The translations under genes and the position numbers were made by a program. From IMG/VR virus record IMGVR_UViG_3300044625_001067, positions 1-64,000 of that record: DNA of 64,000 nt, one strand, 5' to 3'. Positions 41,423 to 63,612 of the stretch are shown in pieces (the first letter of the stretch is position 1; each line of letters begins with the position of its first letter). The notes beneath the pieces were generated by a model. The model made no database searches. It was not told the origin of the DNA and was given only the letters and a program-made list of their open reading frames with translations.

Positions 41423-41548
41423 TGACTAAGAGTGTTAGAGGTTAGCATGTTCCTTTGGGCGAAAACAGTAAGATAGAACGAAGGCCAAGTTCCGTATCTG
41501 TGAGTAGTTTTGACAGAGGAGGTTGAGGTTCGAATCCTCGTTAGTCAC
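41423..41548 (+). ncRNA. tRNA-like RNA with ~50-nt hairpin insertion in the anticodon arm (Gln-like)
   Basis: TGACTAA/TTAGTCA acceptor, D arm, TGAGG-TTCGAAT-CCTCG T arm; extended anticodon arm. Confidence 0.7.
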
Positions 41549-42177: not shown

Positions 42178-42244
42178 TGCCCAAGATAAACCCACTGGCT
42201 AACCCTGGTACGGTTAATCGCAAGGCAATCCCTCCGGAGGGGAA

Positions 42245-42309
42245 GGTGCGTGGCTTAGTGGTAAAGCTGGTCCGAAAGGCTGAACGCAGGTTCGATTCCT
42301 GCCGCACCA
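42245..42309 (+). ncRNA. tRNA-like element with GAAA tetraloop replacing the anticodon loop
   Basis: GGTGCG/CGCACC; canonical D arm GCTT-AGTGGTA-AAGC; GCAGG-TTCGATT-CCTGC. Confidence 0.7.
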
Positions 42310-42310
42310 C

Positions 42311-42951
42311 TTGGAGTGAGATTCGAGAGTTAGTCGCCTCGATACCCGCAGGGGTATAGCTTAAAGACTCCCTAACAGAGCGCACTCAACCCCAGTTATC
42401 CCACGGCGCTGGTCGCATAGCCGAAGGCACTTCCTGAAGAAGGAACAACTACCGCTGGCGGACCTGGGGCGGTTTGTTGTAAAACAATTGGTATTCAGTA
42501 GCGTCTCGCGAGCAACGCTGATACAACCAGGTCCTGCGACCCTAAGTTAATGCCTCCACGTGGCAGGGTTGGTAACTTTCCCTTTAGGAAAGGCCAAATT
42601 AACAGGGAATTTCTCATCCCGTACGTGAGAAACCTCGACCAAGGTGAGAAGTCAGTCGCTCAGGACACTCTGGGAAAACCTGCCAAGGGTTAATTTGGAC
42701 GGAACTTTCATCCGTTACGTGAAAGCTCTCCTTTGGATTTCGAAGGAATCCGGGGTACTTTGACAGCGATTTGCTCTAAAACCTTCAACAGGTCTGGCAA
42801 TTCGGTGAGTTTGATTCCCGCTTACTCCATTGGATTTTCTCAAATCCGACACCCCCAGAAAAGTTTACTACCTTTGGTAGTGACTATAATGGATGAGTCA
42901 CTGCTCTGCTTGGGCGAAAGCTAAACGGATAACCGGACCGTTCAGCTCCAA
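42311..42951 (+). ncRNA. large ornate structured RNA (~640 nt) with several pseudoknots
   Basis: Terminal stem TTGGAGTGA/TCAGCTCCAA and many long-range complementarities (see findings); no credible ORF. Confidence 0.7.
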
Positions 42952-55057: not shown

Positions 55058-55147
55058 TTGTCACCGTGGTGGGCCACTCCTGTGTCGTTCACCGGATATG
55101 ACCTGTGGGTGTGTTCTTTAACGAGTTTTCGAGGACTTGAAACTAAG

Positions 55148-55236
55148 TAGGCGTGTAGGGAGTCGAACCCTAACTAGCCGGTAATCTGCCGGAGAGGACT
55201 GTATAAGGGTCCCTGTGCACCGTACACCACACGCCC
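55148..55236 (-). tRNA. tRNA-Ile(TAT) with long variable arm
   Basis: GGGCGTG/CACGCCT; loop CTTATAC; V arm CCGG-CAGATTA-CCGG; TAGGG-TTCGACT-CCCTA. Confidence 0.8.
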
Positions 55237-59296: not shown

Positions 59297-59839
59297 TTAA
59301 CTTGCGGGCTTTTCCGGCGAAGAGCCAAGTTCCTGGGATGCGGCTAGATAGTCTTCGATGGCTGCATGAAAGTTGGATTCAAATTCAGCTATCGTTTCGC
59401 CGTGAAACGAGATAATGTCGTCGATGTCTAGGACACGACCAACAATAATCTTGTCTTCAGTATCGAAGACCATACTGGCTGTGTAGTCTTTGTAGGCCAT
59501 GGAATTGATCATGGCTTTCCGCACCCATGTAGAAGAATACGGTTCAGTAAGCATGTACAAACCTTCCTCAAACTTCCCAGTAGAGAGAATGATTTGGAGG
59601 GCTGTTTGAGTTTGTTCGTGAAGTTGCCTGTACTCCTCTTCCTGTGACTCGGTCAATTCTTCTAGGTCTTCTCCAGTCAGAATTTCGTGTATGTCTCCGA
59701 TAACCCAACTGTTACCATACGGTCTTTTCGGGTCTATTTCCGGAGCACCGAATTCACAGTTTCTCCACCCAACGTGCATTCTTCTCAGCAGTTTCAGGTG
59801 GTTTTGAGTTAGGAGAAAGAAGGTCTTGCTGTTAGTCAT
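59297..59839 (-). CDS. phage domain fused to truncated HicB antitoxin domain
   Basis: C-terminal 'YKDYTASMVFDTEDKIIVGRVLDIDDIISFHGETIAEFESNFHAAIEDYL...PEKPAS*' is HicB N-domain-like and ends before the DNA-binding domain. Confidence 0.75.
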   Translation of the reverse strand: MTNSKTFFLLTQNHLKLLRRMHVGWRNCEFGAPEIDPKRPYGNSWVIGDIHEILTGEDLEELTESQEEEYRQLHEQTQTALQIILSTGKFEEGLYMLTEPYSSTWVRKAMINSMAYKDYTASMVFDTEDKIIVGRVLDIDDIISFHGETIAEFESNFHAAIEDYLAASQELGSSPEKPAS

Positions 59840-59853
59840 AACAAAAATGGGAA

Positions 59854-59965
59854 TGGGACCGGCAGGACTCGAACCTGCAACCGCGCCTTTAAAAGAGGTA
59901 ATTTAATTGCTGATGTATCTTTGTCAAGATAACTTTTCGTGCTCTACCAGTTGAGCTACGGTCCC
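59854..59965 (-). tRNA. tRNA-Lys(TTT) with 39-nt insertion in the anticodon stem
   Basis: GGGACCG/CGGTCCC; CG[39 nt]CCT-CTTTTAA-AGGCG; GCAGG-TTCGAGT-CCTGC. Confidence 0.8.
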
Positions 59966-60696
59966 GTATTTGATCCGAAAACTACCTGGAGCGATATTGA
60001 AAGTTTTTTCTCAGCCCCCTGAGCTACTCTCCAATGTTAATGGGTTCAAAGGTTAAGTTAAACCACTCCCCGTCAGAGTTACAGAACAAGAGCTTAGAGT
60101 CGCTATCGTCGGGGTAATACCAGATCAGCATGTTCTTTAACGATTTGTTTTGGGAGTTTTTGGGCAGGGTCTCACCTCGCTTCAGTCGATACAATACGTC
60201 ATGCCCTATCCCTTTACTCGGCACGTCTAACCGTATGCCCTTGTCACCGTCAAAACCTGCTTCAGTGGGTGTCATATCTTTTTGTTAGGTCTACGTTCGC
60301 TTGGCAAATTACTTGGATCGATAATAAAGGTGTTTAGCCCCCAAGTTCTAGAGCCTATATGAGTCCACACAAACATTCAGCATCAACACTTTTCTTTTGG
60401 GCAGGTTTTCACCGGGAAAAGAGTAAGGATGTAACTTCACACCCGTTTGATTTTCAGGGTTAGCATAGAAACAATTGTCATAGTAGTAGCTCGGAAGATC
60501 ATACTCGTCTTCGGGGTCGAGAACTGCTACAATGTCTTCCTTAATGCGAACTCTCCCTTCTACCTTAGTGAGGGGTATGTGATCGGGAGGTAAAGATAAG
60601 AGTACACCAACAACAACTTCCATGTTATCCGGGAAGTCGCTCAGTCTTTCCTTCAGGTCTTTTACTTTCATTCTGTTTACAAAGTCTGAGTTTAAC

Positions 60697-60746
60697 TAGA
60701 TAGTTGTTTTTCCCAAGAGAGTTAGGGTAAATCGCTGAACTATCTA
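60697..60746 (-). ncRNA. hairpin with TCAGC/AAAAACA internal-loop motif
   Basis: TAGATAGT-TCAGCGA...AAAAACA-ACTATCTA. Confidence 0.65.
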
Positions 60747-60764: not shown

Positions 60765-60886
60765 TCGAAGAGGCAAGATTCGAACTTGCGTATGGCGGTT
60801 CCTTTTGCGTATTGGGTAATTGCTGAATTACCTAAGCTAGGTAATCTTTTTGCATTACCACTGCCTAACCACTTGGCTACTCTTCG
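60765..60886 (-). ncRNA. tRNA scaffold whose anticodon loop is replaced by an AAAAAG-hairpin-TCAGCAATT module
   Basis: CGAAGAG/CTCTTCG; GCC-AAGTGGTTA-GGC; GTGGT/ACCGC; GCAAG-TTCGAAT-CTTGC. Confidence 0.8.
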
Positions 60887-61759: not shown

Positions 61760-62137
61760 TCACTTGGTTGACCTTGCATACAAATTCGACAGTAGCAGAA
61801 GCAGAATGAGTGACAAAATGGACACAGAGCCTAAGATTACGATTGGGCTAAACACTGAGAGCCATGGCCAGGTTATTTGCCCCGTTAATTTCAACCCGAG
61901 GAGGAGACCCTGGGCTGTCATTAACGAAACTGCGAGATTCTCAAACATTAGTTATTTCTCATGCGAAAGTAGTTGAAGAATCATCCAAAGGGCTCCCAAC
62001 CCAAGTAGAAAAATTGGCACAAGGGTTGGTGAAAGCACTGTGAGCCAGGGCCAGGAAACCTGACCCGTTACTTTCATAGTCATGAATACGGTTTGCAGAA
62101 CGATGCAGAGGGCACCCGGCAATTTGATCCAGATCAT
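61760..62137 (-). CDS. two tandem paralogous small membrane proteins (61952-62137 and 61760-61948)
   Basis: 'KVTGQVSWPWLTVLSP' vs 'KLTGQITWPWLSVFSP'; first overlaps the DUF2828 stop. Confidence 0.7.
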
Positions 62138-63612
62138 GCTCCTTCAGCAAATACGGCACCGACAGCGTCGTACCTTTCAGTGTAAACAGCGTCACGCATA
62201 GCCCCTACAGGCGTAATTACCCCGCCAGTAAGCACAGCTTTCAGGATTGAAGGGCTGCACCCGGAGACCAGGCAAGTTCCCGTGTCGTGCATTTTCATAG
62301 GTACGTTGCCGCTAGAGTTAACATTCCAGAAGACAAGTTCCGGCAAGGAATACCCAGCTTGAGCGTACTTGATTCGCACCGCCTCAAAGTTTGTCACTGA
62401 GTTGTTTCTGCAGCAGGAATCAAACTGCATGTCTGAGACAATGATGAGCTTGCGCGGCATTTCCCCCTCAGGAATATGGTTCATCGTGGCGGTAGCCAAC
62501 ACAAGATTGAAGACTGCTTGCAGGTCTGTATTCGCACCCCAGTCGGCCCGGCTAAGGTTACGAACACGCTCAGCAACGTTTCTCCCTGTAACCGACTGCA
62601 ACTGCGGTCTTCCGGAGAAGGTTAGGAACTTATCCTTCCATGCCCCGGTGTTACGCTCAGCGATGTACATCGCCAGCGAGATTGAAACCGCCATGGGCAT
62701 GCCGCCGTTATTTCCCATTGATCCTGAGACGTCGGCAATTACCAGGCCGTTCAGCTGCTCTCCTTCCATGTAGTTGGGTAGAGCCTCCCACATTAAGTTT
62801 AGAGTCTGATCGCTCCTCTCACCCCCGTAAAGGTACTTGTGCACGATCTCGTAAGGGTAGATCGTACCGGCATTGATTTTTGCCTCACCTTTCTCTACCG
62901 AGTCAAGGTAGGATTGGTAGCGGTCGCCGTCGCGCTTGGCGAAAGCTTTACGATACATGAAGCCTGCCCGAGAAGGCAACTTGCTATAGTCAATGCTTTC
63001 CCACTCACGGGCACACATTGGCTGCTCAACAATCTTGACTTGTGACCTGAGGGCAGTCAGTGCCTTGCGGTACTGCCTCTCGGTCCAACCCATTGCTTCG
63101 GCAATTTTTCGGCCAATCCTCTTAGAGTCCTGGCTGGAAGCGTTAATGGAAGGCAGCCACTTTGCCAGAAGTGAAACTGACTTTCCAACTTCCGTATTTA
63201 GGTCGGCGTTCAGTTGTGCCTTAATTGCTTCGAGTGCGATGCCCCAAACTAAGGTACCGTCAAGGGCTACCACATCATCCCAGCGACCGTACTGTGGAAT
63301 CAGGCTAACTAGCCTGGCACCAATTGCAGCATCATTTCGAACCAGCTCCTTGAAAACTTCTCGAAAGATCTTTCGCTCTCCCTGGCCCCCACGAATGTCG
63401 CGTGCCCAAAACAAGATTCGAGTTGCGGTCTCAGGGTCTTCTGCGTAGGCAAGGTTGAACAGTCGAGTTGCTTCGCTGATTTTGTCACGGCAAGCTGCAA
63501 TCTTTCCAAAAAGGTCCAGGCACTTAGACTCGGTGGACTTGTATGCCTTTGCACCGTTTGCAGTGGTAGTTTGGTTAAACTCGTTTTCGAGTGCGTTTAA
63601 AAAGGTTGTCAT
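62134..63612 (-). CDS. DUF2828 family protein (TROVE/Ro60-like helical domain + vWA)
   Basis: 'TANGA...ST..CLDLF', 'RDIRGGQGER', 'YGRWDD', 'AKWLPS', MIDAS 'DVSGSM', 'SDMQFD', 'VFWNV', 'VSGCSP'. Confidence 0.88.
   Translation of the reverse strand: MTTFLNALENEFNQTTTANGAKAYKSTESKCLDLFGKIAACRDKISEATRLFNLAYAEDPETATRILFWARDIRGGQGERKIFREVFKELVRNDAAIGARLVSLIPQYGRWDDVVALDGTLVWGIALEAIKAQLNADLNTEVGKSVSLLAKWLPSINASSQDSKRIGRKIAEAMGWTERQYRKALTALRSQVKIVEQPMCAREWESIDYSKLPSRAGFMYRKAFAKRDGDRYQSYLDSVEKGEAKINAGTIYPYEIVHKYLYGGERSDQTLNLMWEALPNYMEGEQLNGLVIADVSGSMGNNGGMPMAVSISLAMYIAERNTGAWKDKFLTFSGRPQLQSVTGRNVAERVRNLSRADWGANTDLQAVFNLVLATATMNHIPEGEMPRKLIIVSDMQFDSCCRNNSVTNFEAVRIKYAQAGYSLPELVFWNVNSSGNVPMKMHDTGTCLVSGCSPSILKAVLTGGVITPVGAMRDAVYTERYDAVGAVFAEGA

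What the first reader, a model, noticed from the sequence alone, without database searches (positions are those of the whole stretch)
59854..59965. tRNA-Lys(UUU) with a 39-nt insertion between positions 28 and 29
Seen: removing 59899-59937 restores a canonical 73-nt tRNA-Lys (CGCCT/AGGCG stem, CUUUUAA loop). The insertion is far too short for a group I/II intron and is not at the usual 37/38 intron site. Its 5' AAAAG is also exactly complementary to the anticodon-loop CUUUU, so an alternative fold would hide the anticodon. Established: tRNA-Lys(UUU) is the target of the anticodon nuclease PrrC. Inference: a masked tRNA, a nuclease decoy or a conditionally spliced tRNA.
Basis: partly seen in the sequence, partly recalled or inferred. 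Interest (0 to 1): 0.78.

Follow-up and report, generated by a model that had tools for sequence, protein, structure and literature searches.

The report
Phage tRNA carrying a Y-RNA module
The 39-base insertion in this phage tRNA-Lys is real, but it is most likely not an intron or an anticodon mask: it is one copy of a conserved RNA module that marks the small RNAs encoded next to a Ro60-like protein gene in many phages, so this is probably a tRNA-shaped "Y RNA".

Summary
Observation confirmed. A 112-nt tRNA lies on the minus strand at 59854-59965. Deleting 59899-59937 gives a canonical 73-nt tRNA-Lys(UUU), and the junction is unambiguously 28/29.

The same module sits in the anticodon arm of many other tRNAs (Arg, Gly, Asp, Asn, Thr, Pro and others). 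It is also in the neighbouring tRNA-like gene (60765-60886). In circularly permuted form it occurs as free-standing stem-loops, one of them at 60696-60746.

All of these cluster just downstream of a DUF2828/DUF7788 gene (62134-63612), whose predicted fold matches Ro60 over its full length. Across 80 phage loci, the motif with its stem is about 67 times denser downstream of that gene than on the opposite strand. The pattern extends to Synechococcus phage B3, Mycobacterium phage Aegeus and Bacillus phage Tsamsa.

No spliced or insert-free form was found in any assembly or RNA library. Anticodon loops vary between relatives while the module stays fixed.

Best reading: a Y-RNA-like, Ro-binding module grafted into a real tRNA, a new variant of tRNA-mimicking Y RNAs. 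A protein-spliced intron remains the main rival. Binding and splicing are untested.

The parts
59854..59965 (-). tRNA-Lys(UUU)-type gene carrying the module (tRNA*), 112 nt
   Evidence: Rfam tRNA 48.5 bits; sequence read; deletion test
59938..59965 (-). 5' part of the tRNA, positions 1-28 (acceptor 5' strand, D arm, A26, C27, G28)
59899..59937 (-). 39-nt inserted module: A-rich tail AAAAG (59933-59937), hairpin TATCTT-GACA-AAGATA (59916-59931), tail TCAGCAATTA (59904-59913) and AATTA (59899-59903)
   Evidence: the same architecture is seen in 17 or more other copies
59854..59898 (-). 3' part of the tRNA, positions 29-73 (CCT, loop CTTTTAA, AGGCG, variable loop, T arm, acceptor 3' strand, A73; no encoded CCA)
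60765..60886 (-). Second module-bearing tRNA-like gene ('X2'). The body resembles tRNA-Gln. The module sits in the anticodon loop, and no canonical 7-nt loop is left after removal. Hairpin ATTACCTA-GCT-TAGGTAAT, then TCAGCAATTA at 60817-60826.
   Evidence: Rfam tRNA 41.9 bits; orthologue alignment with a compensatory hairpin change and a U.G -> C-G change in the stem
60696..60746 (-). Free-standing 'E-element': stem TAGATAGT/ACTATCTA enclosing a loop that starts TCAGCGAT and ends AAAAACA. It has a Y-RNA-like architecture and is a circular permutation of the tRNA insert.
   Evidence: homologous elements in L084, L082, phage B3, Aegeus and Tsamsa
62134..63612 (-). Ro60-like protein gene (492 aa; DUF2828 + DUF7788; helical-repeat N-terminal part plus vWA-like C-terminal part)
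   Evidence: Pfam and PHROG hits. The AlphaFold model matches phage phiLo Ro60, Xenopus, human and Deinococcus Ro60 over the full length, probability 1.00. Homologues are annotated 'Ro-like RNA binding protein'.

Best explanation
The 39-nt insert is a copy of a conserved RNA module: an A-rich tail, a 5-9 bp helix, then a (U/A)CAGC(A/G)A(U/C) tail. This module defines a family of small RNAs encoded next to a Ro60-like (TROVE/vWA-type, DUF2828) gene in many phages. The family includes free-standing stem-loops in which the two tails face into the loop, versions with an internal T arm, an acceptor/T-arm minihelix, and complete tRNAs with the module inserted in the 5' strand of the anticodon stem or in the anticodon loop. 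By analogy with Ro60 and its Y RNAs, whose genes also sit next to Ro60 and which in bacteria mimic tRNA, the module is most likely the binding site for the phage Ro-like protein. On this view the tRNA-Lys body is the second, effector-facing half of a bipartite Y-like RNA. The RNA would then act unspliced, as a ribonucleoprotein, within an RNA-repair or quality-control cassette (phosphoesterase, Band-7 protein, Ro-like protein, with RNA ligases elsewhere or nearby). Shown here: the family, its covariation, its synteny with the Ro-like gene, and the Ro60-like fold. Inferred: that the protein binds the module, that the RNA is not spliced, and what the tRNA half recruits.
For: (1) The same module occurs in other tRNAs of other phages.
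(2) The helix is kept through many compensatory changes: 27 distinct E stems and 20 distinct hairpin stems. 72% of distinct CAGC[AG]A sites downstream of the gene have an adjoining stem, against 6% on the opposite strand.
(3) Synteny: in 80 loci holding the protein gene, motif-plus-stem density is 1.6/kb in the 1.5 kb downstream on the same strand, against 0.024/kb on the opposite strand. 50 of 70 loci with at least 600 nt of sequence downstream of the gene have at least one copy there, down to 41% protein identity. The same holds in isolates: Synechococcus phage B3, Mycobacterium phage Aegeus and Bacillus phage Tsamsa.
(4) The protein's model matches Ro60 structures over the full length, and its relatives are annotated Ro-like.
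(5) A sigma70-type promoter sits so that transcription would start at the 5' strand of the first E-element. The 5'-3' stem plus a loop motif close to the published Y-RNA 'CGAA / GNCGAA' motif fits Y-RNA architecture (PMC4201824, PMC12135203).
(6) Variants without any anticodon arm (minihelix plus module; E-element with T arm) show that the module, not decoding, is the common denominator.
(7) Anticodon loops differ between relatives on one scaffold: six loops on the ACGGC/GCCGT stem, G33 in two Lys copies, and an 8-nt loop in one Gly copy. The module is nearly invariant.
(8) Only the interrupted form is found in assemblies and RNA libraries.
Against: No binding data exist, and the complex prediction was not run by the tool. 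The motif is CAGC(A/G)A, not the published GNCGAA, and no Rfam Y-RNA family matched. In known Y RNAs the Ro-binding helix is formed by the RNA's own 5' and 3' ends; here it is an internal hairpin. Conceptual removal restores a perfect anticodon stem-loop in several tRNAs, and the 28:42 pair co-varies across the insert, which is what a spliced intron would also predict. The phage has RNA ligases that could reseal exons. The related loci are not independent samples. The RNA evidence comes from assembled contigs of libraries that capture mature tRNAs poorly.
Confidence: 0.55

Rival explanations
1. A protein-dependent tRNA intron of a new type. An endonuclease, from the phage or the host, recognises the helix with its two tails and cuts both tails. 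The phosphoesterase heals the ends and a phage RNA ligase joins the exons, giving a working 73-nt tRNA-Lys(UUU). The excised hairpin might itself be the small Y-like RNA.
For: Removal restores a canonical stem and loop in Lys, Arg, Gly, Asn, Thr, Pro and Asp copies. There is a compensatory 28:42 change across the insert. An Rnl1-like ligase lies at G000 85670-86896. In a relative, an RNA ligase, a Macro domain protein and a metallophosphatase sit directly upstream of the Ro-like gene. Huge-phage tRNAs with conserved 'enigmatic introns' have been reported (bioRxiv 10.1101/356790).
Against: No spliced junction is found in viral or metagenome assemblies, while the interrupted form is. RNA-library contigs show only the unspliced form. 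The phage has no splicing endonuclease or RtcB. Insertion sites differ (28/29, 29/30, loop). Several copies leave no usable anticodon loop (X2, G33, 8-nt loop) or have no anticodon arm at all. The same module occurs outside tRNAs as E-elements, where there is nothing to splice.
Confidence: 0.27
2. One reading: the insert's AAAAG pairs with the anticodon loop CUUUU, hiding the anticodon of a masked or conditionally active tRNA-Lys.
For: The 5-nt complementarity exists in the window copy.
Against: AAAAG-type A-rich tails occur in modules in tRNAs with unrelated anticodons and in free-standing elements. The G:C pair is lost in L013. The predicted fold does not use the pairing.
Confidence: 0.05
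3. A tRNA pseudogene disrupted by a small selfish DNA insertion (miniature mobile element) with no function.
For: GenBank annotates the homologous gene in Synechococcus phage B3 as a pseudo-tRNA. Some copies have odd loops.
Against: The tRNA body and module are conserved across relatives whose Ro-like or adjacent proteins are as little as ~66% identical, with compensatory changes. There are no terminal repeats or target duplications. Placement next to the Ro-like gene is strict and strand-specific. The region is present in RNA libraries.
Confidence: 0.06

Closest known systems
Bacterial and phage Y RNAs, especially YrlA, bound by Ro60/Rsr (Chen et al. 2014, PMC4201824)
   Same: The genes lie next to a Ro60-type gene. 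The RNA is bipartite, with a helix-plus-motif part and a tRNA-like part. The loop motif is close to the CGAA / GNCGAA motif. The setting is an RNA-repair neighbourhood.
   Different: Here the tRNA part is a complete tRNA with free acceptor ends and, in many copies, a canonical anticodon arm. The helix module is an internal hairpin inserted at 28/29, not the paired 5'/3' ends. The motif is CAGC(A/G)A. The protein belongs to the divergent DUF2828 branch. No Rfam Y-RNA model matches.
Thermus phage phiLo Ro60 with Yrl1/Yrl2 (PMC12135203; PDB 9kop, 9l5y)
   Same: It is a phage-encoded Ro60 with adjacent small stem-loop RNAs carrying a conserved motif. It is the best structural match of the window's protein.
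   Different: Protein identity is only 16-17% over the structural alignment. Its Yrl RNAs are free-standing and not embedded in tRNAs.
Conserved 'enigmatic introns' in tRNAs of Lak and other huge phages (Devoto et al., bioRxiv 10.1101/356790)
   Same: Short, highly conserved insertions in tRNA genes of very large phages, with unknown processing.
   Different: Those were placed by a eukaryote-mode tRNA predictor. No shared module, no Ro-like neighbour and no anticodon-stem position were reported. Whether they are related was not tested here.
Archaeal tRNA introns at non-canonical positions (bulge-helix-bulge, EndA; PMC4090602)
   Same: Short protein-spliced insertions can lie in the anticodon stem, and removal restores the tRNA.
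   Different: No bulge-helix-bulge can be drawn, the phage has no EndA, and the host is bacterial.

Membership tests
Y RNA / YrlA-type Ro60-associated RNA | Gene lies next to a Ro60 (TROVE + vWA) gene | tested here: met
   The Ro60-like fold is shown. The tRNA* lies 2.2 kb, and X2 1.2 kb, downstream on the same strand. Enrichment across 80 loci is shown, and in isolates.
Y RNA / YrlA-type Ro60-associated RNA | Long stem formed by the RNA's 5' and 3' ends, carrying the Ro-binding motif (GNCGAAN0-1G / CGAA) | tested here: not met
   In the tRNA-Lys copy the helix is an internal hairpin and the motif is TCAGCAAT. The free-standing E-elements do have a 5'-3' stem, with CAGCGAT / CAGCAAT at the start of the loop.
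Y RNA / YrlA-type Ro60-associated RNA | tRNA-like domain (T arm, D arm, acceptor-like stem) | tested here: met
   Full Rfam tRNA match, 48.5 bits
Y RNA / YrlA-type Ro60-associated RNA | Physical binding to the Ro60 protein | not testable with these tools
Y RNA / YrlA-type Ro60-associated RNA | Match to a curated Y-RNA covariance model | tested here: not met
   Only tRNA hits at E <= 1 in the window, in phage B3 and in the Aegeus locus
Archaeal/eukaryal protein-spliced tRNA intron | Bulge-helix-bulge at the exon-intron borders, and a splicing endonuclease available | tested here: not met
   No such fold (inspection). PF01974 is absent from the 98%-complete phage genome, while the same search did detect it in the four archaeal control genomes.
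Archaeal/eukaryal protein-spliced tRNA intron | A spliced product exists | tested here: inconclusive
   There was no 39-nt skip in four metatranscriptome assemblies and no spliced junction in assemblies. These data capture mature tRNAs poorly.
Group I / group II self-splicing intron | Catalytic core of at least ~200 nt | tested here: not met
   The insert is 39 nt, and no Rfam intron family matched
Ro60 / TROVE protein family (for the neighbouring gene) | Helical-repeat ring closed by a vWA domain | tested here: met
   Model at pLDDT 65. The eleven best PDB matches are all Ro60 structures, full length, probability 1.00, E 3.5e-7 to 7e-4. No sequence-level PDB or TROVE Pfam hit.

The most novel reading that the evidence does not exclude
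The module-bearing tRNAs are baits or sensors for host anticodon nucleases. They present real anticodon loops (Lys UUU, Arg, Asn, Asp and others) that diversify quickly in an arms race. Through the module they are tethered to a Ro-like RNA-repair machine (phosphoesterase, Band-7 protein, RNA ligase), which would capture the nuclease or repair the cut tRNAs. This would be a phage counter-defence built from a Y RNA fused to a tRNA.
Probability: 0.2. Interest if true: 0.9.

Novelty: new variant of a known kind. Interest (0 to 1): 0.72.

Why it matters
This reading would explain a class of "pseudo-tRNAs" and oversized tRNAs that annotation pipelines discard in large cyanophages and other phages. 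It may also bear on the unexplained conserved "introns" of huge-phage tRNAs.

It links the widespread DUF2828 phage protein to Ro60 and gives it candidate RNA partners with a simple, testable motif.

It would show that Y RNAs can be built directly on genuine tRNAs. That makes the long-open question of what the tRNA-like half of bacterial Y RNAs does directly testable, in cultivable phage-host pairs such as Synechococcus phage B3/B23, mycobacteriophages and Bacillus phage Tsamsa.

Tried and rejected
- **Archaeal-type splicing:** no bulge-helix-bulge, no EndA and no RtcB in the phage.
- **Self-cleaving ribozyme:** the opposite strand has CTGATG, but the hammerhead core is not met (inspection). 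Rfam gives no ribozyme hit at the insert.
- **Internal promoter:** the insert holds TTGACA-N16-TAAATT, matching 10 of 12 consensus positions. The TTGACA lies in the hairpin loop, which differs in other copies, so this was judged coincidental.
- **Isolate search:** DNA searches of isolated phages with the two tRNAs found no insert-bearing relatives. Relatives came from protein-anchored and pattern searches instead.
- **Alternative pairing in X2** (GGTAAT with ATTACC): not conserved in orthologues.
- **Complex prediction (protein + RNA):** not folded, so it gives no evidence either way.
- **MAFFT alignment of modules (A4):** not structure-consistent, so covariation was tallied with my own script rather than with the count of structure pairs.
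- **First ARAGORN deletion scan:** too permissive. It was replaced by a strict version.
- **Literature:** searches found no description of this module.

Full report
**What is there.** The window is the first 64 kb of a 277-kb, 98%-complete virus record with 55 tRNA matches. Its large terminase is 60% identical to that of Synechococcus phage S-CBWM1, and the DNA is found in lake-water metagenomes. It is therefore a freshwater jumbo cyanophage relative.

On the minus strand, 59854-59965 matches the Rfam tRNA model end to end at 48.5 bits, with 52 nt where the model expects 13. Reading the strand gives a normal acceptor stem, D arm and T arm. The anticodon arm reads C27 G28, then 39 nt, then CCT, CTTTTAA, AGGCG. 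A strict deletion scan required a fully paired 5-bp stem, U33 and R37. It leaves a single solution: remove 39 nt after position 28, giving a 73-nt tRNA-Lys(UUU).

**It is conserved, and the tRNA structure is selected across the insert.** More than 15 related contigs carry the identical interrupted gene. In a diverged relative (L013, where the neighbouring protein is 84% identical) the exons carry six substitutions. These include the compensatory G28:C42 -> U28:A42 change. The 36-nt core of the insert is unchanged there; only its ends differ in length.

**The insert is one copy of a module.** A second tRNA-like gene 0.8 kb upstream (60765-60886, 41.9 bits) has an insert with the same plan: A-rich run, perfect hairpin, then TCAGCAATTA. 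I scanned viral contigs for AAAAG-N19-TCAGCAA followed by a T loop, and then followed up the hits. This found the module in tRNAs of other phages:
- Arg(UCG), Gly(UCC), Asp(GUC), Asn(GUU), Thr(UGU), Pro(UGG) and further Lys copies;
- several copies where the module sits in the anticodon loop and no clean anticodon remains.

In the stem-inserted copies the junction is 28/29 (Lys), 29/30 (the ACGGC/GCCGT scaffold), or ambiguous within 27-29.

The hairpin sequence differs between copies but always pairs. The A-rich 5' tail and the (U/A)CAGC(A/G)A(U/C) 3' tail are constant. It occurs next to unrelated anticodons, the predicted fold does not use the pairing, and L013 loses its G:C pair.

**The same motif exists outside tRNAs, circularly permuted.** Intergenic elements of about 50 nt, which I call E-elements, have a stem such as TAGATGAT/ATCATCTA. 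Their loop begins with TCAGC(A/G)AT and ends with an A-rich run. This is the same helix with the same two tails, but the tails are joined by a loop instead of leading into a tRNA.
- One lies in the window at 60696-60746, directly after the second tRNA-like gene.
- Another lies in the main tRNA cluster of the genome at 137542-137590.
- Their stems co-vary, for example GAT/ATC against GGT/ACC.
- In phage B3, in L084/L112/L120 and in Bacillus phage Tsamsa, a near-consensus sigma70-type promoter is placed so that transcription would start at the 5' strand of the first element.
- Arrays alternate E-element, module-bearing tRNA, E-element. They include E-elements with an internal T arm and an acceptor/T-arm minihelix that carries the module but has no anticodon arm at all.

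**The neighbour is a Ro60-like protein.** The 492-aa gene at 62134-63612, on the same strand and 1.2-2.2 kb upstream, has Pfam domains DUF2828 and DUF7788 and matches a PHROG called 'RNA-binding protein'. Its AlphaFold model is of moderate quality (pLDDT 65): a helical-repeat N-terminal part plus an alpha/beta C-terminal part. The eleven best PDB matches are all Ro60 proteins, aligned over the full length with probability 1.00. They are Thermus phage phiLo Ro60 and Xenopus, human and Deinococcus Ro60. Homologues are annotated 'Ro-like RNA binding protein' in mycobacteriophages.

The gene order phosphoesterase, Band-7, Ro-like is shared between this cyanophage and Mycobacterium phage Aegeus. 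A relative adds an RNA ligase and a Macro domain protein just upstream. This is an RNA-repair-type neighbourhood.

**The association is strong and strand-specific.** In 80 viral loci holding the protein gene (40-99% identity):
- The motif with an adjoining stem occurs at 1.6 per kb in the 1.5 kb downstream on the gene's strand. It occurs at 0.024 per kb on the opposite strand and 0.066 per kb inside the gene.
- 50 of the 70 loci with at least 600 nt of sequence downstream of the gene have at least one copy within 1.5 kb.
- Counting each distinct sequence once, 72% of CAGC[AG]A sites downstream have a stem, against 6% on the opposite strand.
- The loci are related to each other, so these are not independent trials. 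However, the pattern recurs in three isolates from very different hosts. In Synechococcus phage B3 the tRNA copy is annotated as a pseudo-tRNA. The other two are Mycobacterium phage Aegeus and Bacillus phage Tsamsa.

**How it most likely works.** Ro60 proteins are known to partner with Y RNAs:
- Y RNA genes lie next to Ro60.
- They have a 5'-3' stem and a large loop with a conserved CGAA-type motif.
- In bacteria and phages they carry a tRNA-like domain (PMC4201824).
- A phage Ro60 binds two adjacent Y-like RNAs (PMC12135203).

The E-elements fit that description with a variant motif. The module-bearing tRNAs carry the same helix and tails grafted into the anticodon arm, which is roughly where the Ro-binding stem emerges in YrlA. 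I therefore read the 112-nt RNA as a tRNA-built Y RNA. The module would bind the Ro-like protein, and the tRNA half would face some tRNA-recognising partner.

Two further points favour a non-decoding role. First, anticodon loops change between relatives on one scaffold while the module is fixed: six different loops on the ACGGC/GCCGT stem, G33 in two Lys copies, and an 8-nt loop in one Gly copy. Second, only the interrupted form is seen. Four lake metatranscriptome assemblies hold unspliced contigs and show no 39-nt skip. The spliced 26-mer junction is absent from viral and metagenome assemblies, whereas the interrupted 65-mer is present.

Binding, lack of splicing and the partner of the tRNA half are all inferences.

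**The main rival.** This is a new kind of protein-spliced intron. An enzyme would cut both tails at the base of the helix and a phage ligase would join the exons. It is favoured by:
- the exact restoration of canonical anticodon arms;
- the covariation across the insert;
- the ligases: an Rnl1-like gene at 85670-86896 in this genome, and a ligase next to the Ro-like gene in a relative.

It is weakened by:
- the absence of any spliced form;
- the absence of EndA and RtcB;
- the copies with no usable anticodon or no anticodon arm;
- the occurrence of the module outside tRNAs.

The two readings could coexist if the excised hairpin were itself the small RNA. The available RNA data are contigs from libraries that under-represent mature tRNAs, so they cannot settle this.

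**Novelty.** tRNA-mimicking Y RNAs and phage Ro60 proteins are known. A Ro-type module inserted into genuine tRNAs, the CAGC(A/G)A motif, the link to DUF2828 proteins and the variable anticodon loops were not found in the literature searched. The nearest report is of unexplained conserved tRNA 'introns' in Lak megaphages. I rate this a new variant of a known kind.

Noticed in passing
window 42244-42310 (+) and 42539-42604 (+): A 67-nt tRNA match (40.4 bits) that ARAGORN misses. About 230 nt downstream there is a weak match to an HDV-like ribozyme family (25.6 bits, E 0.62). This could be a tRNA-linked self-cleaving ribozyme.
   Followed up: no
G000 137882-138000 (-) and G003 76958-77075 (L075): A 119-nt tRNA-like gene with a different conserved insert: a co-varying hairpin followed by CCTCGGTAAAGGACCGTAA, inside a CCTCC/GGAGG stem. 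It is conserved between two phages and looks like a second type of tRNA-embedded module.
   Followed up: partly
G000 138412-138570 (-): A 159-nt tRNA match with an intact-looking CTGGG/CCCAG arm (loop CACATTA) and an ~88-nt structured insertion in the variable region.
   Followed up: no
window 55147-55236 (-); G000 137217-137298 and 141377-141459 (-): tRNA-Ile(UAU) of 90 nt with a long variable arm. Also tRNA-Gly(UCC) of 82 nt and tRNA-Lys(UUU) of 83 nt, each with a ~14-nt variable region. These are unusual for their isotypes.
   Followed up: no
window 41423-41548 (+): A 126-nt element with a perfect 7-bp acceptor stem and a T arm but an aberrant middle. ARAGORN calls it Ser(tga) with a 53-nt intron. 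The Rfam tRNA model does not report it.
   Followed up: no
window 60336-60680: In three lake metatranscriptome assemblies a strain variant replaces 345 nt with 18 other letters. The replaced stretch covers all but the first 9 nt (60672-60680) of the 107-aa ORF at 60348-60671, between the two module-bearing tRNAs.
   Followed up: no
G000 191852-194541 (-): Five copies of CCCAGCAATTCACCC-like sequence with similar upstream context within 2.7 kb, on the strand opposite to the local genes. This is a separate repeat family that shares the CAGCAATT core by chance or by descent.
   Followed up: no
window 59297-59839 (-): The 180-aa ORF directly downstream of the tRNA-Lys copy has a HicB-like antitoxin C-terminal domain (PHROG 9151, E 1.3e-21).
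   Followed up: no
G000 64001-68000 (L023 1040-1858 and 2689-3426, -): A Band-7/SPFH protein and a calcineurin-like phosphoesterase lie upstream of the Ro-like gene. The order is the same as gp55-gp57-gp60 of Mycobacterium phage Aegeus, so this is a conserved cassette across very distant phages.
   Followed up: partly
L168 (Bacillus phage Tsamsa) 965-1137: Two 83-nt genes annotated tRNA-OTHER (pseudo) lie inside the tRNA cluster that ends about 600 nt upstream of the Ro-like gene. An E-like element with a T arm lies at about 735-800.
   Followed up: no
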